A DNA stretch of 43,648 bases from Octopus bimaculoides (taxonomy: Eukaryota), in contig NC_068982.1 in the NCBI RefSeq assembly GCF_001194135.2, positions 166,565,620 through 166,609,267 of the forward strand. Direction: 5' to 3'. Shown piece after piece: positions 3,902-43,561 of this stretch. The notes under the pieces were generated by a model that saw only the letters and a list, made by a program, of their open reading frames with translations, was not told where the DNA came from and made no database searches. A program made the translations under genes and the position numbers. Numbering within the stretch: position 1 is the stretch's first letter; each line of letters begins with the position of its first letter.

Positions 3902-3992
3902 CCTGAAAGTGTGGCTTCTTTGATGAACACATAAGTTTTTGGAAATATTCCCCTCTCATGTTTGTTTTTAATTTTGTAACCTTTATACCACC
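3902..3992 (-). CDS. DOCK1: DOCK-family coding exon 3: C-terminal half of the SH3 domain
   Basis: Minus strand: ttttttatttgtattttAG | GG TGG TAT AAA ... CTT TCA GG | GTaagt. 91 nt, phase 1 in, phase 2 out, translating (G)WYKGYKIKNKHERGIFPKTYVFIKEATLS(G). Compare DOCK1 [27 protein letters not shown] and DOCK5 GIFPETYIHLKEAT. Confidence 0.93.
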
Positions 3993-10579: not shown

Positions 10580-11740
10580 CACACATCTGGCAACAAAAGC
10601 TATTAAGTTCCTAGATGAAGAGAATGGGACTATGGAGTCCCCAATGTAGCCAGTTTTGGTTCCATTTTCAGAGGTTGATCACTTCAATGAACAATAGCAT
10701 TTGCTTGGTAGTCAGACCAAGCAACCACTTACTGGAAAATATTTCAAAAACGTGTCCTCTCTTATCATCATGTATATCTTGGCTCTTGAACCATTTTTGT
10801 GATACCATATTCAATGAATATGAAGTGATAACAGGAACACACATTAATCCCAACTAGGAGATGAATAGGATCAGAGAGAAGCTAATAATCCAGTTGCCAT
10901 GTCCTACCCAGAAATAGGTTGAGAAGAAGCTATACCTGAAAGATTAGGCAAAGGTAATAAATGCATTGCTCTGTAATTCATTACTGTCTACTCGAGTTTT
11001 CATCTGACCAGGTTGGAATGTCTGCTTATTTGCTTCTTGCGGAATGTATACATTCCACAGGTTTAGTAAGTCTGTCTGCTGCCAATGTTGCTAATGGTAT
11101 AGCAACCCTTAGATTTTGTAGAGGGTTAGTGGTGGACAAGAACAAAAATATTTGGGTGAAGACTGTGAGTCCTTGTTATTACTTCATATTCATTGAATAT
11201 GGTATCACAAGCCCAGATATACATGAGCGATAAGAGAGGACATATTTTTGAAATGATTTCAAAATATTTCAACGGACTTTCAGCTGGGGGACTATATAGA
11301 TAACTCCCTGAAATCTTTGATTTATTTGTGAAAAACCGAGGACAGCTAGTTTAATATAAACTCTACAGGTACGATGACGCCAGTAGCTGGACGTGTTTGA
11401 GATGCATGCTGGGCAAAGAAACTATTCTGCACATACTCACTCAGCGTCCAGATTTTACTGACTTGGGCAGTTACTTCAAATAACACATTGCAAGTGGGAA
11501 GGATTTAGCTATCTACCAAGTCTACTGTAAGGATCACCATTCTACCTACCATTAACCAGGAAGGAAAAGCAGTTTTCCTCTTTAGTAGTCAAGATGAAAG
11601 AAATTATATGGTGGACAAGAGTGAAAGGACTGAAGAAAGACACTTTCTTCTTCAAACAAACTCTGATCAACTTCAAGTTCCACTTGGAGAGGAATGTGAA
11701 AATGAAGAGGCAAGTATTTCCCCTCACAGAATTTTCTGAA
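10580..11740. mobile_element. Decayed LINE reverse-transcriptase-like remnant with an internal inversion
   Basis: Weak RT-like fragments (LLAECIHST..NVANGIATL; IEYGITK; KYFPVSG). Part of the sequence is present in both orientations. Clade not assignable. Confidence 0.3.
10735..11260. repeat. Inverted repeat: arms 10735-10842 and 11165-11260
   Basis: The reverse complement of arm 1 aligns to arm 2, with core ACTTCATATTCATTGAATATGGTATCACAA identical and a ~13-nt gap in arm 2. Confidence 0.9.
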
Positions 11741-14496: not shown

Positions 14497-14580
14497 CATC
14501 TGTTTCTTCTTCAATATATACAGTTTGTCCAACAGTGAGGGGTAAAGTCCTATCTGCAGTGCCATGATAGCTGTAAATCA
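14497..14580 (-). CDS. DOCK1: DOCK-family coding exon 2: N-terminal half of the SH3 domain
   Basis: Minus strand: ttttctttttttgtttcAG | TG ATT TAC ... GAA ACA GAT G | GTgtgt. 84 nt, phase 1 at both ends, translating (V)IYSYHGTADRTLPLTVGQTVYIEEETD(G). Length and phases equal vertebrate DOCK1 exon 2 as recalled ([28 protein letters not shown]). Confidence 0.9.
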
Positions 14581-17550: not shown

Positions 17551-18212
17551 TCACATGACAATGAAACATGGGCTGTGACTACTGTGGATATGTGAAGGCT
17601 TGAAAGAGATGAAGCCAGTATGTTCTAATGAATGTGTAGTGTCAGTGTGCATATATGACAGACTGTAAGTGATTTGAGAGAAAAACTGGGCATACGTGGT
17701 ATCAGATGTAGCATGCAAAAGAGAAGACTGTGCTGTTACAGCCATGTAATGCATATGGATGAAGACAACTGCATCAAGAGGTGATGATCTCAAATTGTAG
17801 AGGGAACTTGTGGAAGGGGTAGACCTTAAAAGATGTGGGACAAAGTAATGAGAAAGAATCTACAGATGTTAGGGTGCACAGAGGGGATGGCAGGGGACTG
17901 AGCCTCCTGGTGGTTTACTGTATTTGAAAAGATACATGAAGCCAAGTAAAAGTATGGATGTTCTTGCATAGAGGCTGTCCCCTACATCCCTCTCTAGCTG
18001 AGCATTCCTAACCTTGCAGGCTCATGGGTGCTGGTGCTGCATAAAATCACCCAGTACACTTTGTAAAATGGTTGGCATTAGGAAGGATATCCAGCTGTAG
18101 AAATGATGCCAAAACAGACATGGAGCCTGGGCAGCTCTTAAGCTGGCCAGCTCTTGTCAAACCGTTCAACCCATGTCAGAATGGAAAACGGATGTTAAAT
18201 GATGATGATGAT
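17551..18212 (+). mobile_element. Older 5'-truncated RTE LINE (RT C-terminus, 3' UTR, (ATG)n tail)
   Basis: ETWAVTTVDM*RLERDEASMF**MCSVSVH..LREKLGIRGIRC..KRRL..HVMHMDEDNCIK..VEGTCGRGRP*KMWDKV is collinear with the ORF at 43133-43460. Tail at 18060-18212. Confidence 0.85.
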
Positions 18213-19140: not shown

Positions 19141-20240
19141 TAACTTAACAACAACAAAGTCAAACAAAAATCCATTTTAATTGAAACATAGTTGTTTCTA
19201 GGCATATAAGCCTCTAAAGGACAATTTATTCATGTATAAATGAGGGAAGAAAAAAGGAAGAAGTGGAGCAATGAGATTCCAATTCAGAGACCTGAACCAT
19301 TATGTAAGTCAATTATTCTTGGGTGTGTTTTATAGGAAATAAAAAGATACCAATATATAATATTCAGTACAAATTATATGAAATTACATGAAGAAAGTAT
19401 TATTAAATATTCCAGATATACTAATAGGTTTTCAACTTGCAACTTTGAAAGTCGCTGAAGAGAAAATATTTTTTTGTACACTATGAAATAGTTTGCAATA
19501 TTTAGAAATAAATATTAAAAGTCAAACAAACCAAAATTATGTTACAATGTTCATAAATTTTCTTAAATGTTGATTTTTAACAAACAGTAAGTAACATATA
19601 TAAAAGTAGTAGAGTTGAAGAGATTATATTGTATAAGATGAATACCACCAATCTATTAGGGCTGATTTTAACTGACTACATGCAGGTCTTTTTGTTGGGG
19701 GCTGATTGTGCCTAATAAAATAAAATAATTATTTCATAGTGCAATAAATTTCCTAAAAGAAAAGTCTCCTATTTAATAACAGAAGTTCCATATCTTTCTA
19801 TTAAGTATATGTATTTTGTGTATGTATGTGTATACACATGCATATAAATTTGTTTTTAATAAATTAATCAGTTATCCAAGGAGGAGAGGCAGTACTTCAC
19901 CTTTGTAGGCTGATGAGATTGATATAGATGATAAACTTGAACACCTCCAAATCAATGTCTGTAGGAGAATATTCCAGAAGATAGCAGAAAGGCTGTGAAG
20001 TGTTTTGTGTAGAGTTTGGGGAGATAAGGCACTAAGAGTGATAGGAGAAAGAAAGACAATTGGGTTAGATAAGATGTGGAAACAGTACACAGCTAGCTAG
20101 TTCTCTCTCTCCATGCCCACAATTTTTAAAGTTTAAGAATATTCTTGTAAATATATGATTTCTTCAGTTGTTAAATAATAATATTTAATTTTTTTTTTCT
20201 AAACCAAAATTTAATGAAAAACTATATATGTATATATATA

Positions 20241-21439
20241 TTGGGTTATCCCATAGATGATGCGGTTTTTTTCAATTGCATGAACTAAAATAGGAGGGGG
20301 ACAAGATAAATTAACTGCATCAACTTGCTATAAAAGCAGGTAGTAATTTTACCTTGAATGTATTCTTAGTGCAAGTTTTGAAGAGTGCAATTCGATTTTA
20401 ACAGTATTTTCCAAAGCTATAATGGAAGTGACAAAGGAGCATATTCGGCATATTTTGCTTTATGAGTTCAATAAACGCAACAATGTAACGGAAAGTGCAA
20501 GGAATATTAATGTCATATATGGGGATCGGACAATATGCATAAGCCAGTGTCAACAGTGGTTCCAGAAATTCTGAGCCGGAAACTGTAGCCTAGAAGACAA
20601 GCTTCATCCTGGAAGATCTGTAGAGCTTGATGAGAATGTCCTGCAAACCCTGGTGGAACAAAATCCCATCATAACCGTTGAGGAACTAGCAGAGAAGCTT
20701 GGATTTGGTCATTCAACCAATCATCAACACCTGTGTGCCATTGGAAAAGTCAGCAAATTGGGTTAATGGGTTCCTCACAAACTTTCCAAGTCTAATTGCA
20801 TGCAAAGAATGAACATGTGCTCTCCTTTGCTGTCACATCTCACAAATGAACCTTTTTTGGACTGAATAGTGACTGGTGATGAGAATTGGGTTCTCTATAA
20901 AAATGTCAAGTGTCAAAGACAGTGGGTAGGGAAAGGAGAAACACCAGCACCCCAGGCCAAAGGTCTTCACCCATATAAGGTGTTGTTATCTGTCTGCTGG
21001 GATATGAAAGGTTTAGTCCACTTTGAAGTTTTAAACCCAAACCAAATGATAACAAAGGAGATCTACTGTGAGCAGCTTGAGCAGCTTAAGTCAATGCTAG
21101 AAGAAAAACAACCATCTTTGGTTTCAAGGTTTTCTTCCATCAGCATAATGCTTTGCCACATACAGCGAGGATGACATTCCAAAGGCTAGAGCAGTTTCAA
21201 TGGGAAATGATGCCCCACCCACCATAGTCACTGGACACTGCCCCATCTGATTATCATTTATTTCACAGTCTTCAAAACAGAAAAAATATGAGGTCAGAAC
21301 AATACTGGAGAAGTATTTTTCATTATGGACAAGTGGATTTTGACTGCCAGATAGATGGATGTGCATTTTAGATTAAAAAAGAACTTTATCTTAATTTTGA
21401 AAAATAAAAAAAACCCACATTATTTATGGGATGACCCTA
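20241..21439 (+). mobile_element. Near full-length dead mariner (mellifera-subfamily-like) with both TIRs and TA target duplication
   Basis: TIRs TTGGGTTATCCCATAGATGATGCGGTTTTTT and reverse complement TAGGGTCATCCCATAAATAATGTGGGTTTTTT, TA on both sides. Transposase from ATG 20422: MEVTKEHIRHILLYEF..WVPH..VTGDENW..HQHNALPH..*SLDTAPSDY. Stops, a frameshift and D>H at the second catalytic Asp. Confidence 0.93.
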
Positions 21440-21639
21440 TATATATATATAAGAAACAAGTTTACAATAATAGTCCCAAGTTATGAAATAGTTATTACAG
21501 AAGATTAACATCACGTTGAGACTAGATATTTTACACATATTTAGATATATCTAATATCTATCTTTTGTGAAAATTGCAAGTGAATGGAATAAATATTTCC
21601 ATAAGTCATGAAAAAATAAACAAACAATCTTTCAAATTG

Positions 21640-22223
21640 CAGCGGCCAAAAGTTAAGAGTCACTTAGAGAAAATGAACTGCTAATCAAGGAATTTGTTGT
21701 TTAGAAGATTGTTAATGGGCTAACAGTTACTGTTTATGATCCTACATTATTGGCACATTCAACTGTCGACATGGCAGCTTGTGAGAGATGACCGATGTCC
21801 TGTGATGAAAAACATAGGATTGTGTGCCTTCACCAAGAGGGTAAGTCAAATTCTGTGATAGTGACTCATGTAGGAAGGTCTAAAAGTGTTGTGCAACAAA
21901 TTGTAGCTCATTTTAAGTCATCAGGATTGACAGACGCTAAACCCAAAACTGGTAGACCTTGTGAAACTTCACAAAGACAGGATCGTATTATGGTTAGAAT
22001 GTCACTGAAGGATAGGTTTAAGAGTGCTGCTGAGATATCCCGTGAGTTTAGCTCCACTTCCCATGTCAGCGTATCGTGCAAAATAGTTTCTCGGAGGTTA
22101 CGAGGTTCTGGGTTGCTTGCTCGGGCACCAGCAAAGAAACCTCTGATCTCCAAGAAGAATCAAAGAGCCCATCTTCATTTTGCTCACAAACATGTCATTT
22201 GGACAGAAGTATGGCAGACATAA
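21640..22223 (+). mobile_element. 5' half of a Tc1-like transposon (DNA-binding domain)
   Basis: TIR-like CAGCGGCCAAAAGTTAAGAGTCAC at 21640. ORF 21795-22223 has ..KTGRPCETSQRQDR..VSRRLRGSGL..KKPLISKKNQRAHLHFAHKHVIW. Truncated before the DDE domain. Confidence 0.88.
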
Positions 22224-23322: not shown

Positions 23323-23781
23323 ATAAAATACGTAATGTTGCTAGTCTCTATATCCAGGAGTTCATTTACTGAATCTAGCTTGGTTTCATGCTTATTTATC
23401 TCATCTCTCCCTCCCACTATCTTTTCGTATTAGTGTGTTAGTATTAGCATAAAATGCATAATACAAAAAGATAGTGAGGAGGGAAGAGATAAGCAAGAAA
23501 GCAAGCTGGATTTAGTAAATGAACTCCTAGATAGAGAGAGCAGCAACAAAAACACACCTCCTTGGGTTTGGTTTTATTATTTTGTTGCCAAATTACACTG
23601 AACGAGAATTTTGCATTTTGGCTGAATACTCCTGAGAATAATTCGGAATCATGTTCTTTGGTATCATCATCATCACAATTATGTAGCTATAATAGAGTTA
23701 TGTATGTAATACTAAAAAACAAATCTCTCAAGTAGCAGAGTGCTGAACTAAATACTTTTATACTATTTCATCTCTCTAGAT

Positions 23782-25618: not shown

Positions 25619-26595
25619 AAAAGGCAATCATTACACCCAACTTCATGTGGATGTTTTGTTAGAACAATAAATACTGCATTATTTACCTACAGAGGACCTC
25701 TCATATGCACACATGGGACATAAAAGCAGTCCTGTTTATATTGTTGGCAGATGCGAATCATCTGCTAAGGGCACCAGAACTGCCAGATCATGTAATTTTG
25801 ACCTACCTGGTCTCTTCAGTGGCAGTCATCCAGTAGCTGCATAACAACTAAATCTCAATGTCAATGATATATAAAACTGTTGTGTCGTTTCAGGCACTGA
25901 TGTTACAAACAGCCAGCAAGCTTATTAAAAAATAATTAATAGTAACAGATGCAGTATTAATACCAAAAGGCAATCTTTGTATCCAACTTAACATGGATGT
26001 TTTGTTAGAACACTGAAAACTGCATTATTTCCCATGCGAGGACCTCTCATATGGATGCATGGTGCATAAGAGCAGTCTTTTTTTTAGAAATAATACATTT
26101 CTAAATCTCTCAGAGAGATTTATGAAGTAGTGATACGATGAAGTAGTTGTATGCTGTCAACTTAATGTGACAGTCCCCTGAAGGGAATAATACTGCTGTT
26201 GGTCAGACCTAGGAAGCTGCACCGCTTCCTGTCGGCCTCGACACATTTCCTGTGTCCTTATGTTTACAAGGGGGAGACAAGACTCAGAAACATGTCTCTG
26301 GATGTAGGCTTAGCTGGGTGGAGGTGCTTGTCTCCCCCTTGTAAACATAAGGACACAGGAAATGTGTCAAGGCCGACAGGAAGCGGTGCAGCTTCCTAGG
26401 TTTAACCAACAGTAGTATTATTCCCTTCAGGAGACTGTCACATTAAGTTGACAGCATACAACTACTTCAAAAGGAGTCTTATTTATATTGTTGGCAGATG
26501 AGAATCATCTGCTACAGGAACTAGAACTGCCAAGTTACATGATTTTGTCTTTCTTTTCTCACCCGCTTTCCCTGGTTCTCTTTCAGTCAGCAAGC
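25619..26595. repeat. Local tandem duplication (period 346 bp); second copy interrupted by a 395-bp insertion
   Basis: Copy 1 starts AAAAGGCAATC at 25619 and copy 2 at 25965. They are collinear through GAGGACCTCTCATATG, and homology resumes at 26481 (TTTATATTGTTGGCAGATG). Confidence 0.9.
26139..26469. repeat. Fold-back: 143-bp inverted arms (26139-26281, 26327-26469) with a 45-nt spacer
   Basis: Hand alignment gives 138/143 identity with no indels. Confidence 0.97.
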
Positions 26596-26679
26596 ATTTT
26601 TCCTGTTCAATCTCTTGGTCACATTTACTTTGAAGAGACAGTGACAATATAGAGAAAAGAGGATATTAGTTTTCCAAGT

Positions 26680-27010: not shown

Positions 27011-27934
27011 ATATTGCTGTTAACCAGAGAGAAATATTATGTAGAAATATTAGGAAGTAGTTCAGAAGAAATCAAAGCATGAAATAGTCATAAATTTTAA
27101 AATAATTATACAAGAGAAATTCTACCGGAAAGAAAGAACTAATGTACATTGCTTTCAGACACTGGACAGACAAATTATACAACATTGTTAGAATACCAAT
27201 CCTTCACTAGTCTTAAGTCCTATCTATTGACAGACCTGATCCATTAATCTCCTTAACAAGTCAAAGAAAAATATGCAACATGCCTGTGTCAATCACATGC
27301 TGTATTATTTAATGGTCTCCGGCCAGGCTGGTGTGTCATCTTCAAGTCAATTAGTAGTTATTGCAGTCTGGTATTTTTTTTTTATCATTCTCTAGTGAAT
27401 GGTTAAGTTATCCTCAGACATAAACACAACTCAACACACCATTTTCACTTATATGGTATGCACAAACATATACATTATTTTTATACACACACACACACAC
27501 GACAGGCTCCTGCACACTTTCTTTCTGTTAAATTCTACTCTGAAACATTGGTCAACCCAAATTTACAGCAGAACACATGTGTCCAAGGTACCACGCACTG
27601 GCAATATATGACAGAAATCTTTATCATTGTTCTTCAGTTATTTGTTTCTTTTTAAGTTAAATGTAGAAACATGCATATTTTAATGAATTATACAGCATTC
27701 AAAAATAATTATAGAATACATTAGTGATTAAAATGAAGTTAGTAATTTGTTGCAAACACTAATCAGACATGGCCACACAATTAAGATTAACTAGAAAACA
27801 AAATGATACCCCATCTAGCAGGTAGTGAACTATACAGGTCATTATACATCAGGGTGCAAGATCTCTAATAGATTTATATATATAAGGCAAATAAGTAAAT
27901 GGGAATGAATTATGTAAAATATTAATGTGTAGTT

Positions 27935-30125: not shown

Positions 30126-31826
30126 GGATGGACTCAGTTCATGGGTGGCAACATTCATTGTTGTGTTTAATACCACCATCTAGTTTGTAGGTAAGTCATT
30201 CAGGCCAGGTATCCAATCTGCTCATAGGTGTTGTCTTTTTCCCTCTGAATATGCTCAAGAAAACATATATGAAGAATATAATGTTTTATTCTGTTATTTT
30301 CTTTTCTTTTTATTCAGATCTAATAACTTCAATCTATTTTCAACTTATTATCCTTTTTTAAGAGCTCAGAATACTAATTTAGTTAGTCCTCTATTCATAA
30401 ACATTTGAAAATCAGAAGAGGCAATAGCAAACATGCTTCAGTACATTACTAATGTTTTATTAAATCCCAGAGTAATTAATGAGCGCATATATGTGAGTCA
30501 ATAGCATACCAGGCAACCAAACAAGCAGCTGGCATTTAACATCTTACCACTAGGCAACATTATGTCTGTGGTCAAGAGTCCAGTCAATTTAGTTGGAAAT
30601 AAGTACTACAGGGCATGAGCAACTCACTCTTCAAATAGCAGTAGCACTGAAGAATGCCACATATTTTGTTACTTTGCAATCCAACTGCTTGTATGGGTAT
30701 AACTTAGAGGATAAGGCTCCACCAAGCTGACATGCTCCAGATGCACTTCATAAAGATAAAGTATTCAGGTGTATGCTATGACCTAGTGGTTTTAAAAAAT
30801 CAGCTCAGAGATGCCCCTCTTAGTATGTAGTGTTTCTACATTAGTATTTGATGGAAGGGTTTGTTTTATATAATCTTTGTATTAATTACAATTCTGGATC
30901 CTTGCATCACAAAGTCTCCATGTTTGAACAATAACTCACCAGGTTTTTAAAAGCAGCAATTTTACCTCTGCTACTGACCACAACAAACTCAACACATTTA
31001 CTCAGTAAGCATCAGTCATTCAAATTACATATCTGTATATGTGTAATCAGTTCTGCATAGATATGCCACCTAATTTTGACGCCCAATACCATTCTCCACC
31101 CACTTATCATCAACTCTTAAAGAATCAATTATTGTACATACAATGTGCCACTTTCAAATTCATTATTTTTCAATTACTACAAAAAATTCAATATTGACTG
31201 TAAAATTTCTTACATAATATCATACTGTATTGAAACAAGATATTCTAAGTTCATAATTTCAAACATAAATCCTACATTTAACCAAATGTTAAGGTGAGGA
31301 ACAAACTCTGCAGTTAAGGGCCAAGATTTTATTAGTAGGAACACAGTACAAGTCATTCAAAAGATCCCATCTCCAGTATGTGACAGTACTATTAATAATT
31401 AAAATGTTTAATTAATTGTTTGTGAACTGTGTCAGTTGCCTGAGAATTTAACTGAATGAGAAAATCAGAGAAATGACATTTACAATTATAAAAAGAAAAG
31501 AAGAAAAAAAAAACAGGACTTTCCACTGTAATTAACTGTTTATCTTTATTTTTCAGAGCTATGTAGTGTATTATGATATATATATGTTCATGAAGTAATA
31601 ATACTTCATCTAATAAGATCATATAATATTGTAGTAGTAACTTAGAGTGCATAATTTCTCACGGAATTCTAAAGGAGTGTAATATTTATTACTTTGGCAC
31701 ACTCTCACTTTTCTTTCTTTTCCTTTCTCTTACTCAGTATTATGGCTGGATGCCTGTCACCAACCACTGTAACTTAATTCCACTTTATAGTATAGGACAA
31801 AATGATATAAATATTTATGAACTCTA

Positions 31827-32098
31827 GTTTAGTTAAAATATGTCTGTGACAGATCTTAACTTCTAAAGACAAATTCACTGCAGTTGCCATGGAGCAAAAA
31901 TTCTCTCATAGTAAAAGGTGCAAAGGCACCACATCTGCCCAGTGCTTCCCTCTATTGGATTCCCAAATGGCTGTTTCTGGCTCTTTAGCCTTCCTCAATG
32001 AGAGGTGTTTTTACACCTTTTACCATAAGATAGAATTTTTTCTTCATGGTAACTGCCTTTAGAAGTTAAAATATGTTACAAACATATCTTAACTAAAC
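31827..32098. mobile_element. MITE-like fold-back: ~100-bp imperfect TIRs (31827-31930, 32004-32098) flanked by TA
   Basis: GTTTAGTTAAAATATGTCTGTGAC..CTTCTAAAG..GCAGTTGCCATG..GTAAAAGGTG pairs with the right arm, with an 11-nt gap. TA at 31825-31826 and 32099-32100. Confidence 0.7.
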
Positions 32099-33170
32099 TA
32101 AAGTTTGTTTATTCCTAATCACTGCTTGGCACTGACGCTGTTATATAAATAGTTACATATCACAAGTAATATTTTCAGATGATCAAGTACCTGTTTCAGA
32201 CACCAAAGTGAACTAAAGCAATGCAGAATAAAGTGATCTTGTAAAGACAATTTGGGGATGTTACCCAAAAAGACTGACATCACAAAGGAAAGGAGAAATT
32301 TATCTGAAAGATAAAGACAAATTTCACATGCAGGCACATGTAGATCAAGATTAAACCAACTGTATCCATATACATTTTGAAGGGTCTAAGAACTGTTAAC
32401 ATTTTTACAACTACCATATGTTCACTTTTGAACTATTGTTTAGAGAAAGGGACCTTAATGGGTTAGGGATCAGTGCTTGAAGTTTATTAAATTATATATA
32501 TCTTCTATTTCAAATGATTTTTTTTTTAAATAACAATTTATTATGAATTAATTGTTAATACTACTGCTATTGTTATTATTGGGACTCCATTTTTTTCATT
32601 GTATATATTTTTATAACATGAGAATGAAGAGAATGTAAGTGAATTCTGTTGGATTTTTTTTTTCTTTTTTGCAAACAGCTTTATTTTGATTCTCTAATTA
32701 TAAATCATTAAAAACAGGGCCCTGTATTGTTCTTAAATGTTTCATCACAAAACTAAAAACATAATGTTGAACAACTTTTTAAAATTAATTCTTTTGCCCA
32801 ACAATGGAATTTTATCATGTGGAAACAGAGCTTAGTGATGGTTCTACAGTAAAGAAGATGAAACCATCTTTTATGAGAAACAAAAAAAAAAAAGATGGTG
32901 TTATTTAAAATTCTGTAAAAAAATCTATATCTCAATAGACACAGAAAAGTATATATATTCTCTAAAAAGTTCAGCCTTGTCTTGTCAAGCACAAAGAAAA
33001 AAAAAACAGGATTATAACACAAATTAGTCATAAGAATTATACAAATGAAAACTTCTAAGTCGTTACTAAATAGTTGTCTTTCGTTTTCTTCTCATAATAA
33101 AAATGACTTACTTAGAAACAGAACTTTTTTTTTTATAATGGGAAATGAATTGGTGAATTGAATTATTGTA

Positions 33171-34135: not shown

Positions 34136-34145
34136 TAGAAAATTC

Positions 34146-34465
34146 ATCATCATTATCATTTAACGTCCATTTTCCATGCTGGCATGGGTTGGACAGTTTG
34201 ACAGGAGCTGGCTAGGCAGAAGACTGCACCAGGCTTCACTGCATGTTTTGGTATGGTTTTTATGGCTGGATGCCCTTCCCAATGCCAATTACTCCACAGA
34301 GTGGACTGAGTGCTTTTTATGTGGCACCAGCACTGGTGAGGTCTATTTTGGCATGTTTTTGCAGCTGGGTACCCTTCCAAATGCTTACCATTTTACAGTG
34401 TGGACTGGATGTTTTTACATGGCACCAGCACTGGTGGGGTCACCAAGTAACTTGCAAGACTTGGT
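34146..34465 (-). mobile_element. RTE LINE 3' UTR/tail copy
   Basis: (CAT)n TTAACGTCCATTTTCCATGCTGGCATGGGTTGGAC..GGATGCCCTTCC; a ~70-bp unit is duplicated. Confidence 0.85.
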
Positions 34466-38084: not shown

Positions 38085-38400
38085 GTACATGTTAACACTT
38101 GTGCCGGTGGCATGTGAACAAAACATTGGACTGACTCCTGTGCAGGTGATACATAAAAAACACCATTTGAGTGTGGCCATTGCCAGTACCACCAGACTGG
38201 CCCTCGTGCTGGTGGCACGTAAAAAGCACCCACTACACTCTCGGAGTGGTTGGTGTTAGGAAGGGCATCCAGCTGTAGAAACTCTGCCAAATCAGATTGG
38301 AGTCTGGTGCAGCCATCCGCTTCGCCAGTCCCCAGTCAAATCATCCAACCCATGCTAGCATGGAAAGCGGACGTTAAATGATGATGATGATGATGATGAT
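38085..38400 (+). mobile_element. RTE LINE 3' UTR/tail copy
   Basis: UTR repeat units, GGAAGGGCATCCAGCTGTAGAAAC, (ATG)n tail. Confidence 0.88.
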
Positions 38401-40199: not shown

Positions 40200-40362
40200 A
40201 GACACTCTTGGAGTGGTTAGCATTAGGAAAGGCATCCAGCTGTAGAAACCTTGCCAGATCAGATTGGAGCCTGGTGCAGCCTCCTGGCTTGCCAGTCCTC
40301 AGTCAAACCGTCCAACCCATGCCAGCATGGAAAACGGACGTTAAACGATGATGATGATGATG
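40200..40362 (+). mobile_element. RTE tail copy, well preserved
   Basis: About 92% identical by hand to the reverse complement of 42597-42752. Confidence 0.9.
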
Positions 40363-40869
40363 AAAAATATATTTGAAATATTTATGATGGAATGTTAATA
40401 ATCATGTTTTTGTTATATTATATTTAGTTTCCAGCTTCAGTTAGGAACTGAAACTGGATTGCAGACTTGGTTTCTTTAAATAAATCAGAGATTCATTGCC
40501 ATACAATGAATTAATGACTGGCCTGTTTTACTGAATGCCAGATGGATGAAATACAAAGCTTATCCCAGTAGGATGTGAATCAACAATAAAATATATACAT
40601 GAAGTTAGGAGTAATGTGTTTGTTTTTCTTTGTCATTCATTCTACAATCTCAGTCATGTTGCTATTATTTTAGTTTCATTACCAGCATAATATATCCACA
40701 TATGTATCATCATCATCATCATCATTATCGTGAAGTAAACACTGCTGTATCAGAAACTTATCGCAATAACATCAGTACAATACCAAACAGATAAGACAGT
40801 GGAAATGGAGTGACCTAAGAACATTATGTACATATATTCAAAACTCATGCATGCATGCACACACAATAT

Positions 40870-42329: not shown

Positions 42330-42588
42330 TCTCCTATAAAAGACGTGCTCAACAACCAGCACAAATAATTTGTTTATAGTGATCAAATGTATGTGCCATA
42401 CATTAGATCACTCCCTCCATCAAATTGACATTATCTGAACAGGTGCATGGGGTATCACATATCAGGTGTCAAAGTGATTGAAGAACAATGTGAGATGAAG
42501 CTTTTTGCACAAAAACACAATGCACCACCTGGTCTAAGAATTGAAACCATGATTTCACAATTGTGCAAGTGCAACACTCTAACCACTA
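42330..42588 (-). mobile_element. tRNA-derived SINE (family B-type head)
   Basis: Minus strand TAGTGGTTAGAGTGTTG..GGTTTCAATTC..TGCATTGTGTTTTTGTGCAAAA. Confidence 0.65.
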
Positions 42589-43460
42589 TCATCATCATTA
42601 TCGTTTAACGTCTGCTTTCCATGCTGGCATGGGTTGGACAGTCTGACTGAGGACTATCGAGCCAGAAGGCTGCACCAGGCTCCAATCTGATCTGGCAAGG
42701 TTTCTACAGCTGGATGCCCTTCCTAACGCCAACCACTCCAAGAGTGTACTGGGTGCTTTTATGTGCCACCGGCACAAGGGCCAGTCAGGTGGTACTGGCA
42801 ATGGCCACGCTCGTATGGTGTTTTTAATGTGCTACCTGCACAGGAGCCAGTCCAGCGACACTGGCAACGACCTCGCTCGAATGTTGTTTTTCACGCGCCA
42901 CCAGCACATTCCAGTCAGGCAACACTGGTAATGATCACACTCGGATGGTGCTCTTAACGTTCCACAAGCATGGATGCCAGTCAGGCAGTGCTGTCATCGG
43001 CCATGTCAGCAAATTTGATTTCAATTTCACTTGCCTCAACAGGTCTTCACAAGCAGAGTTTAGTGTCCAATGAAAGAAAGGTACATATTAGTGGGCTGGT
43101 TACACCACTGGCATAGGCAATGGGTTATGGTCTCACTTGGCTTGCCAGGTCTTCTCAAGGACAGCATATTTCCAAAGGTCTCGGTCACTTGTCATTGCCT
43201 CAGTGAGGCCTTATGTTTGAAAGTCGTGCTTCACCACCTCATCCCAGGTCTTCCTGGGTCTACCTCTTCTATTGGTACCCTCAGCCTCTAGGGTGTGGCA
43301 CTTTTTCACACAGCTATCCTCATCCATTCTCAGCACATGACCATACCAGTGCAGTCGTCTCTCTTGCACACCACATCTGATACTTCTTAGGTCCAACTTT
43401 TCTCTCAAGGCACTTACACTCTGTTGTGCATGCACACTGACATTACACATCCAGTGAAGG
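42589..43460 (-). mobile_element. 5'-truncated RTE LINE: RT C-terminus, 3' UTR and (ATG)n tail
   Basis: WMCNVSVH..LREKLDLRSIRCGVQERRLHWYGHVLRMDEDSCVKKCHTLEAEGTNRRGRPRKTWDEVVKHD is the RTE signature. Premature stop at 43211-43213, natural stop at 43133-43135. Confidence 0.93.
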
Positions 43461-43561
43461 TTATATATATATTGATGATGTATTTTTTATTCTCTCTCGG
43501 GTTCCTTTCTGTTGAAGAGCTTGTTGTTTACACACCTGTCTTCGTCTTTTGTAAATTTCAA

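What the first reader, a model, noticed from the sequence alone, without database searches (positions are those of the whole stretch)
26074..26480. A 143-bp near-perfect fold-back inserted with retroposition-like hallmarks
Seen: comparison with the uninterrupted duplicate at 25721-25745 defines the empty site, so 26080-26474 (395 bp) is an insertion. It is flanked by AGTCTT (26074-26079, 26475-26480). Most of it is a 138/143 inverted repeat. On the minus (DOCK-sense) strand it ends in an A-run (T8 at 26078-26085, partly overlapping the duplication). The hairpin itself has no target duplication or recognisable TIR motif. Known: poly(A) plus a target duplication marks target-primed reverse transcription, whereas MITEs carry the duplication right at the TIR ends. 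Inference: a non-coding long-hairpin RNA mobilised in trans by a LINE, or a Penelope-like inverted terminal structure; possibly an undescribed mobile hairpin family.
Basis: partly seen in the sequence, partly recalled or inferred. Interest (0 to 1): 0.7.

Follow-up and report, generated by a model that had tools for sequence, protein, structure and literature searches.

The report
Hairpin-shaped insertion, probably a retroelement scrap
A 395-base piece of foreign DNA that folds back on itself sits inside an older repeat upstream of the first recognisable exons of a DOCK gene, and its shape fits a known by-product of retroelement integration better than a new kind of mobile hairpin, so it is probably ordinary.

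Summary
Bases 26080-26474 are missing from the paralogous copy at 25619-25800. The joined flanks align to that copy without a gap. The insert is bracketed by a perfect AGTCTT duplication. It holds a 138/143 inverted repeat (arms 26139-26281 and 26327-26469) around a 45-nt spacer.

The anatomy is asymmetric. The right arm tip lies 0-5 nt from the duplication. The left arm tip lies 59 nt inside it, behind a "tail" made of two perfect small palindromes. The true ends of the insert share no terminal inverted repeat. The "A-run" is weak evidence: of the eight T's, two lie in the duplication and three in a palindrome.

This is not MITE geometry. It matches the arm'-spacer-arm-tail pattern expected when both nicked target strands prime reverse transcription on the same short RNA 3' region. 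That pattern is documented for Penelope-like elements and, with much shorter overlaps, for L1 twin priming.

No homology links the insert to any element. There is no hammerhead ribozyme, tRNA, Rfam family or coding signal. The tools held no genome of this organism, so copy number, the decisive test, could not be measured.

Verdict: a single integration event, most likely retroelement-derived. A "new mobile hairpin family" is unsupported. Interest is low.

The parts
25619..25800 (+). Copy A: uninterrupted paralogue of the target. It serves as the empty site, with a single AGTCCT at 25728-25733.
   Evidence: Direct-repeat families D1 and D2; alignments. K2P distance to copy B is 0.163.
25965..26079 (+). 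Copy B, left flank of the insertion.
   Evidence: 80% identical to 25619-25740. Gapless across the junction when joined to the right flank.
26074..26079 (.). Left copy of the target-site duplication, AGTCTT. Possibly 8-12 bp if imperfect: GCAGTCTT or AAGAGCAGTCTT.
26080..26138 (.). One-sided 'tail', 25% GC. It holds the rest of the T-run, a perfect palindrome at 26083-26105 (9-bp stem), a perfect palindrome at 26102-26122 (10-bp stem), and a 16-nt diverged copy of the arm tip (26120-26140 resembles the tip of the arm).
   Evidence: (pair I4).
26139..26281 (.). Left arm of the 143-nt inverted repeat, 48% GC. It is contiguous with the tail.
26282..26326 (.). 45-nt spacer (loop) with no complementarity across the turn. 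It contains an imperfect 16-nt palindrome at 26285-26300, which I read by eye from the sequence. The script's scan for perfect palindromes (stem of at least 5) found none in this region.
   Evidence: inward pairing check; no perfect palindrome in 26275-26332.
26327..26469 (.). Right arm of the inverted repeat, 45% GC. Its tip lies 0-5 nt from the target duplication.
26470..26474 (.). AAAGG: either 5 nt of junction filler or part of a longer imperfect duplication (copy A has AAAGC).
26475..26480 (.). Right copy of the target-site duplication, AGTCTT. It is followed by ATTTAT.
26481..26547 (+). Copy B, right flank of the insertion.
   Evidence: Family D2: 26469-26547 is 82% identical to 25722-25800. 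BLAST gives 87.5% over 26469-26532.

Best explanation
One integration event pasted about 250 nt of the 3' region of a non-coding retroelement RNA into copy B, and that event itself created the hairpin.

Shown:
- The 395 bp are an insertion with a duplication of at least 6 bp.
- They arrived as a single asymmetric piece, arm'-spacer-arm-tail. The right arm tip abuts the duplication, while the left arm tip is 59 nt inside it.
- The insert is about four to five times younger than the A/B duplication.
- Its true ends carry no terminal inverted repeat.

Inferred:
- The target was nicked on both strands about 6 bp apart. On the + strand the nick falls at AGTCTT|ATT.
- The + strand 3'-OH primed a cDNA that begins at the tail end and runs through the left arm.
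- The - strand 3'-OH primed a second cDNA on the same RNA region, starting 59 nt further in, at the arm tip.
- Each cDNA was 5'-truncated after about 190-200 nt, and the two were joined head to head. The unequal truncation points, or filler, left the 45-nt spacer.
- The enzyme was supplied in trans, or by a parent element that was truncated away. It was either a Penelope-like element (RT plus GIY-YIG endonuclease, which cuts and extends both strands and uses two internal start sites) or a LINE acting by twin priming.

The product is a dead, non-coding scrap. If the region is transcribed it would give a 143-bp dsRNA stem, but no function is shown.
For: - Insertion and duplication.
- One-piece asymmetric anatomy, and no direct repeat at the arm tips.
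- No shared termini (TTTTTTAGAA... against CCTTTTGAAG...).
- Age: arm K2P 0.036 against A/B K2P 0.163.
- The insert is foreign in composition: arms 45-48% GC against 35% in the flanks.
- PLE inserts with inverted pseudo-LTRs (pLTRs), flanked by 8-10-bp duplications, with palindromes inside the pLTRs (PMC3846280).
[quoted passage not shown] It starts reverse transcription at two internal sites whose interval is the tail, and it prefers AT-rich ATT cut sites (PMC11167929).
- L1 twin priming gives the same topology, and the two cDNAs can overlap (PMC12016303).
- The window is rich in retroelement 3' fragments.
Against: - No sequence homology ties the insert to any retroelement. None is present in the window and no repeat library could be searched.
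- No hammerhead ribozyme motif, which canonical PLE pLTRs carry.
- The tail is 59 nt, not 30-40.
- No open reading frame starts in the arm and runs through the tail, unlike A. vaga pLTRs. I read this by eye from the sequence.
- The 143-nt overlap is about ten times the human L1 twin-priming median of 12 bp.
- There is no clear poly(A).
- Three serial perfect palindromes could also point to fold-back DNA synthesis during repair.
- The motif TGAAGTAGT recurs near both ends (pair I4), a pattern also seen in subterminal repeats of DNA transposons.
Confidence: 0.42

Rival explanations
1. Non-autonomous DNA transposon (a MITE or foldback element, for example hAT-like with an 8-bp duplication) with long subterminal inverted repeats and an asymmetric left end.
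For: - GCAGTCTT/GGAGTCTT can be read as a 7/8 8-bp duplication.
- A TGAAGTAGT-like motif occurs twice near the left end and inverted at the right end (pair I4).
- The window carries mariner and Tc1 relics and other compact inverted repeats.
Against: - The inverted repeat does not reach the left end of the insert; it is 59 nt short.
- The real termini share only a T-run plus GAA.
- There is no direct repeat at the arm tips. The TA or TTAA sites lie inside the arms, so the complementarity runs past them.
- No second copy in 43.6 kb.
Confidence: 0.18
2. One reading: a pre-existing long-hairpin non-coding RNA (arm'-loop-arm-tail-A's) was reverse-transcribed and inserted in trans by a LINE, possibly as one member of a mobile hairpin family.
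For: Target duplication, a short A-run on the minus strand and a T-rich nick site. The anatomy cannot be told apart from the best explanation without other copies.
Against: - The A-run is at most 6 nt and partly belongs to a palindrome.
- No RNA family, tRNA-like head or second copy.
- A near-perfect 143-bp stem, plus two perfect 9-10-bp stems, looks like freshly copied DNA rather than an evolved RNA fold.
- It needs an extra entity, a hairpin source gene, that the integration by-product model does not need.
Confidence: 0.13
3. Not a mobile element: a fragment captured or synthesised by fold-back (snap-back) DNA synthesis during repair of a staggered double-strand break.
For: Three consecutive palindromes (23 nt, 21 nt and 331 nt) in one insert. 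No homology to anything searched.
Against: - Clean target duplications are not typical of end-joining capture.
- There is no complementarity at the turn of the big hairpin, which self-priming would need.
- The arms and tail are not copied from the flanks or from anywhere in the window.
Confidence: 0.12
4. The 395 bp are ancestral to both copies, and copy A lost them by a deletion between the two AGTCTT microhomologies.
For: A flanking direct repeat with a single copy in the 'empty' allele is formally symmetric between insertion and microhomology-mediated deletion.
Against: The arms differ by 3.6% while A and B differ by 16%. An ancestral hairpin should be as decayed as its flanks unless the arms were continuously homogenised by gene conversion.
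Confidence: 0.03

Closest known systems
Penelope-like element (PLE) insertions with inverted pseudo-LTRs (pLTRs) and a one-sided 'tail' (Penelope/Poseidon, Naiad)
   Same: - Head-to-head inverted copies of the same terminal region.
- An extension at one end only.
- A short target duplication and an AT-rich/ATT nick site.
- Palindromes within the repeat.
- A published mechanism that primes on both target strands from two start sites.
   Different: - No RT/GIY-YIG ORF and no homology to a PLE.
- No hammerhead ribozyme.
- The tail is 59 nt rather than 30-40.
- The insert consists only of the two inverted pieces, with nothing between them but 45 nt.
L1 twin priming (5' inversion of LINE, SINE or processed-pseudogene insertions)
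   Same: An inverted 5' segment joined to a non-inverted 3' segment, flanked by a target duplication. The two cDNAs can copy the same RNA stretch.
   Different: - The overlap here is 143 nt, against a median of 12 bp (quartiles 4-17) in human L1.
- The non-inverted part is only about 200 nt.
- There is no convincing poly(A).
- The LINE family visible in this window ends in (GAT)n, not in A's.
MITEs and foldback elements
   Same: Small, non-coding, with long inverted repeats that fold into a hairpin, and flanked by a short duplication.
   Different: The inverted repeat is not terminal on one side, and the true ends are not inverted repeats of each other.
Hairpin-RNA (hpRNA) and miRNA loci, and SRP RNA
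   Same: A long stem-loop. Rfam covariance models for SRP and for some miRNAs give low E-values on it.
   Different: All hits are far below the gathering scores (49 against 70 bits; 37 against 84). They align only the helix: SRP helix 8 and the Alu domain are deleted in the alignment.

Membership tests
MITE / cut-and-paste DNA transposon | Terminal inverted repeats at the very ends of the inserted DNA | tested here: not met
   The left arm starts 59 nt inside the insert. The first 30 nt and the reverse complement of the last 30 nt share only TTTT..GAA.
MITE / cut-and-paste DNA transposon | Fixed-length target duplication directly abutting the inverted-repeat tips | tested here: not met
   The flanks of the arm tips are ...GATACGA| and |AAAGGAG, with no direct repeat. 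The duplication sits at the ends of the insert, not at the left arm tip.
MITE / cut-and-paste DNA transposon | Many copies sharing both ends | not testable with these tools
   No genome of this organism is held. A control repeat core from the window was found in only 4 metagenome contigs.
LINE-mediated retroposition (SINE or processed retrocopy) | Target-site duplication of variable length | tested here: met
   6 bp perfect, or 8-12 bp with 1-2 mismatches.
LINE-mediated retroposition (SINE or processed retrocopy) | 3' poly(A) or a LINE-specific 3' repeat next to the duplication | tested here: inconclusive
   Of the T8 run, 2 nt lie in the duplication and 3 nt in palindrome 26083-26105. At most 6 A's remain.
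LINE-mediated retroposition (SINE or processed retrocopy) | A source gene or element elsewhere, with copies 5'-truncated to variable extents | not testable with these tools
   No copy in the window. The public collections held here lack this organism.
L1-type twin priming | Inverted 5' segment plus non-inverted 3' segment inside one pair of duplications | tested here: met
   Arm'-spacer-arm-tail between the two AGTCTT copies.
L1-type twin priming | Little or no overlap between the two cDNAs (median 12 bp in human L1) | tested here: not met
   The overlap is 143 nt (compared).
Penelope-like element insertion | Inverted 5'-truncated copy adjacent to the unit, forming inverted repeats | tested here: met
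   Anatomy, compared with PMC8557442.
Penelope-like element insertion | Optional 30-40-bp tail at one end only | tested here: inconclusive
   A one-sided extension exists, but it is 59 nt (53 nt without the T-run).
Penelope-like element insertion | Hammerhead ribozyme motif in the pLTR (canonical clades; absent in Naiad and Chlamys) | tested here: not met
   No hammerhead family at E up to 10 in the Rfam scan of 25900-26650. No CUGANGA core on either strand.
Penelope-like element insertion | RT plus GIY-YIG ORF, or sequence homology to the pLTR of such an element | not testable with these tools
   The insert has no coding signal. No repeat library or host genome is available.
Known structured RNA genes (SRP, miRNA, snoRNA, tRNA-derived SINE heads) | Score at or above the Rfam gathering threshold, or a tRNA-like fold | tested here: not met
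   0 gathering-level hits in the window. The best sub-threshold hits are helix artefacts. ARAGORN finds nothing.

The most novel reading that the evidence does not exclude
The insert is one member of an undescribed family of retrotransposed long-hairpin RNAs, in effect a 'retro-MITE'. Its source RNA already folds into a stem of about 140 bp, and a LINE or Penelope-like RT copies it in trans. Such a family would seed perfect dsRNA stems (ADAR or Dicer substrates) in and near neural genes such as this DOCK gene.
Probability: 0.08. Interest if true: 0.6.

Novelty: new member of a known kind. Interest (0 to 1): 0.2.

Why it matters
If the best explanation holds, this is a textbook-quality small example of how reverse transcription primed on both target strands turns a linear RNA end into a near-perfect genomic palindrome. 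That is useful for repeat annotators, because such scraps are easily mis-called as MITEs or hairpin-RNA genes. Here the Rfam SRP model gave E=1e-11 on the helix alone.

It could matter biologically only if the region is transcribed. A 143-bp perfect stem inside or upstream of a DOCK transcription unit would be a strong substrate for dsRNA-editing or dicing enzymes. Nothing here shows that this happens.

Tried and rejected
1. **Other copies in the window.** BLASTN with word size 7 found none. The best partial hit, 27025-27062 (29/38 matches), scores 20 against a background of 15-18 for other 500-bp tiles, so it is chance.
2. **Other copies through predicted proteins.** The 77-aa hairpin ORF has no word-sharing hit among 5.8 billion proteins. 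An exhaustive HMMER search gave 5 hits, but these are translated tandem repeats. A single 14-16-aa motif (HFLCPxxY[KR]G), repeated 15 times, inflates the score, and one alignment is only about 25 bits. I rejected these as homologues.
3. **Exact look-up of two window ORFs next to or inside the hairpin.** Neither is on record.
4. **Exact scans with arm sequence.** One 22-mer was scanned against the metagenome, prokaryote-genome and viral collections, and two further arm patterns (22 and 21 nt) against the viral collection only. All gave 0 hits. These negatives are uninformative for three reasons:
   - a control core of the window's commonest repeat occurs in only 4 metagenome contigs and in no genome or viral contig;
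   - the DOCK SH3 exons find no protein;
   - the LINE tail finds only 3 metagenome proteins.
5. **SRP RNA or miRNA.** Rejected as helix artefacts.
6. **tRNA-derived SINE.** No tRNA-like fold.
7. **Vector, plasmid or phage contamination.** No BLASTN match.
8. **Sequencing or assembly fold-back artefact.** Rejected. The arms differ by five transitions with no indels, the spacer does not resemble the SMRTbell adapter sequence as I recall it (from memory, no tool), and the insert has a target duplication.
9. **ADAR-editing signature in the mismatches.** All five mismatches being transitions is not significant (P about 0.13).
10. **DOCK exon 1 in the window.** Not found. It therefore stays open whether the hairpin is intronic or upstream of the gene.

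Full report
**What is there**

The window is AT-rich eukaryotic DNA (about 34% GC) packed with transposon relics. On the minus strand it carries two exons that encode the N-terminal SH3 domain of a DOCK1/2/5-type protein, at 14497-14580 and 3902-3992. The best solved-structure match is DOCK5 (E=3e-14; exon sequences).

The finding lies about 11.5 kb upstream of those exons in gene sense. I found no exon 1 in the window, so I cannot say whether the site is intronic or 5' of the gene. From memory, the (GAT)n-tailed repeats look like those of coleoid cephalopods. That is a lead, not a result, because no tool here could name the organism.

**Checking the observation**

- The arms 26139-26281 and 26327-26469 are 143 nt long with 138 complementary positions and a 45-nt spacer.
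- Either strand folds at about -290 kcal/mol, against about -100 for shuffles (z about -33).
- Copy A (25619-25800) is an uninterrupted paralogue of 25965-26079 plus 26475-26547.
- With one AGTCTT kept, the joined flanks align to copy A without a gap across the junction, at 85.5% identity.
- AGTCTT occurs at 26074-26079 and at 26475-26480, while copy A has a single AGTCCT at 25728-25733.
- The insert has no other copy in the window.

**Refinements to the anatomy**

*Length of the duplication.* The duplication may be longer but imperfect: 8 bp with one mismatch, 12 bp with two, or 19 bp with four. Measured against the arm divergence, the 19-bp reading is improbable (P=0.005) and 6-12 bp is acceptable.

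*The A-run.* It is weak evidence for a poly(A) tail. Of the eight T's, two belong to AGTCTT and three pair with AAA inside a perfect palindrome.

*The 59-nt left part (26080-26138).* This segment is highly structured. It holds two perfect, overlapping palindromes, 26083-26105 (9-bp stem) and 26102-26122 (10-bp stem). After them comes a 16-nt diverged copy of the arm tip. Only 141 of 20000 shuffles of this segment reach even one 9-bp stem.

*The geometry.* The right arm tip is 0-5 nt from the duplication, and the left arm tip is 59 nt from it. The arm tips have no direct repeat of their own, and complementarity stops dead on both sides. The whole 395 bp therefore came in as one asymmetric piece, arm'-spacer-arm-tail. 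A later local inverted duplication would have no reason to end exactly at the target junction.

*Age.* The arms differ by K2P 0.036 and copies A and B by 0.163. The insert is much younger than the A/B duplication. This argues for insertion into B rather than precise loss from A.

*The mismatches.* All five are transitions, and all are G/C in the left arm against A/T in the right arm. With five sites this is suggestive only.

*Composition.* The arms are 45-48% GC, the tail 25% and the flanks 35%. The arms are compositionally foreign to the locus.

**What it is not**

- *Not a known structured RNA.* There are no Rfam hits at gathering level in the window. In permissive mode the hairpin draws Metazoa_SRP (49 bits, threshold 70, E about 1e-11) and three miRNA models. 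The alignments pair only the helix and delete SRP helix 8 and the Alu domain.
- *Not a tRNA-derived SINE.* ARAGORN finds no tRNA-like fold.
- *No hammerhead ribozyme*.
- *No coding signal.* The open frames across the arms hit no Pfam family and no real protein homologue. Five hits in the exhaustive search are translated tandem repeats in which one 14-16-aa motif, repeated 15 times, inflates the score.
- *Not plasmid or phage DNA*.
- *Not an assembly fold-back artefact.* The arms have diverged by substitutions only, and the insert has a target duplication.
- *Poor fit to a cut-and-paste MITE.* The inverted repeat is not terminal on the left. The real termini (TTTTTTAGAA... and, reverse-complemented, CCTTTTGAAG...) are not inverted repeats.

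**What it most likely is**

The pattern arm'-spacer-arm-tail between short duplications is what results when both nicked strands of a target prime reverse transcription on the same RNA 3' region, from two start points, and the two truncated cDNAs are then joined head to head.

This is documented for Penelope-like elements (PLEs):

- In Adineta vaga, inserts bounded by inverted pseudo-LTRs (pLTRs) have 8-10-bp duplications and a 31-bp tail on one inverted pLTR. The pLTRs carry palindromes and can mobilise unrelated sequence in trans (PMC3846280).
- The purified anole PLE protein cleaves and extends both strands, prefers ATT in AT-rich DNA, and starts reverse transcription at two internal sites whose interval corresponds to the tail (PMC11167929).

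Here the + strand nick would fall at AGTCTT|ATT.

L1 twin priming gives the same topology, and its two cDNAs can overlap. In human L1, however, the overlap has a median of 12 bp (PMC12016303), against 143 nt here.

I therefore commit to a single target-primed reverse-transcription event with priming on both strands. The anatomy is PLE-like, and the hairpin is a by-product of integration. My confidence is about 0.4. The RNA intermediate, the two start sites and the enzyme are inferred. Only the insertion, the duplication, the one-piece asymmetry and the relative age are shown.

**Why not more confident**

- No homology ties the insert to any element.
- The hammerhead motif typical of canonical PLE pLTRs is absent, although Naiad-type PLEs also lack it.
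- The tail is longer than described for PLEs.
- No ORF start runs from the arm through the tail (read by eye from the sequence).
- The three serial perfect palindromes would also fit fold-back DNA synthesis during repair.
- A TGAAGTAGT-like motif near both ends (pair I4) recalls the subterminal repeats of DNA transposons.

The decisive test is copy number and the shape of other copies in the genome. It could not be run. The protein and DNA collections available here hold almost nothing from this organism:

- the DOCK SH3 exons find no protein;
- the LINE tail finds three metagenome proteins;
- the core of the window's commonest repeat occurs in only four metagenome contigs.

The zero hits for the hairpin therefore say nothing about its abundance.

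**Comparison, novelty and verdict**

The thing works like a PLE-type or twin-primed retroelement insertion. Membership in either family is unproven. For PLEs the anatomical features are met or nearly met, one sequence feature (the hammerhead) is not met, and homology is untestable. For L1 twin priming the topology is met but the overlap size is not. MITE membership fails on two defining features.

I rate it a new member of a known kind, with low interest (0.2). The most novel reading still open is a family of retrotransposed long-hairpin RNAs. I give it about 8%. It would be moderately interesting, because such a family would scatter perfect dsRNA stems through genes.

Noticed in passing
window 42588-43486 (-), 17553-17873 (+); also 1758-2058, 18028-18212, 34144-34333, 38127-38400, 40202-40363, 42588-42881; locus L005: On first reading the window's commonest 'SINE-like' repeat seemed to me RTE-like from its ORF2 tail motif (RRLHWYGHVLRMDEDS...GRPRKTWDEV); that label is from memory and was not tested. 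It ends ...CCATGCCAGCATGGAAA..GTTAAAC(GAT)n and is the 3' UTR and tail of a LINE. A metagenome contig (L005) aligns continuously from the ORF tail into the repeat. Most copies are therefore 5'-truncated LINE ends with a (GAT)n tail, not poly(A).
   Followed up: partly
window 20231-21449: A Mos1-like mariner pseudogene. Pfam HTH_48 and Transposase_1 hit in different frames. It is bounded by 47-nt inverted repeats in TA-rich flanks.
   Followed up: partly
window 21792-22220 (+): An open 143-aa N-terminal fragment of a Tc1-like transposase (HTH_Tnp_Tc3_2, E=1e-15). It runs straight into a (CA)n microsatellite.
   Followed up: no
window 14497-14580 (-) and 3902-3992 (-): Two exons with canonical splice sites that encode the N-terminal SH3 domain of a DOCK1/2/5-type protein (PDB DOCK5, E=3e-14). 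Exon 1 is not in the window, so the intron upstream of 14580 is either more than 29 kb long or exon 1 is too divergent to recognise.
   Followed up: partly
window 23336-23548, 31820-32105, 10735-11260: Three other compact inverted-repeat units: arms of 47-110 nt, 78-91% complementary, spacers of 93-320 nt. They look like older MITE-type elements. No clear target duplication could be read at their tips.
   Followed up: partly
window 40202-40361 and 42588-42747: Two copies of the LINE-tail repeat in opposite orientation, 93% complementary and 2.2 kb apart. This is a second potential long dsRNA-forming pair in the window.
   Followed up: no
window 25619-25800 and 25965-26547: The target itself is a two-copy direct repeat of about 185 bp. 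The two copies start 346 bp apart, and the 164 bp between them is not repeated after copy B. They are two neighbouring copies of some short element or an old local duplication (K2P 0.16), of unknown nature.
   Followed up: partly
window 26157-26427: A caution for pipelines. In permissive mode the Rfam Metazoa_SRP model gives E about 1e-11 on this hairpin purely from its long helix (49 bits, gathering score 70). Three miRNA models behave the same way.
   Followed up: yes
loci L001-L004 (JGI metagenome contigs): Four metagenome contigs carry the same conserved repeat core (TCCAACCCATGCYAGCATGGAAA...) in otherwise unrelated, eukaryote-like sequence. The core domain is therefore shared beyond this genome.
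   Followed up: no
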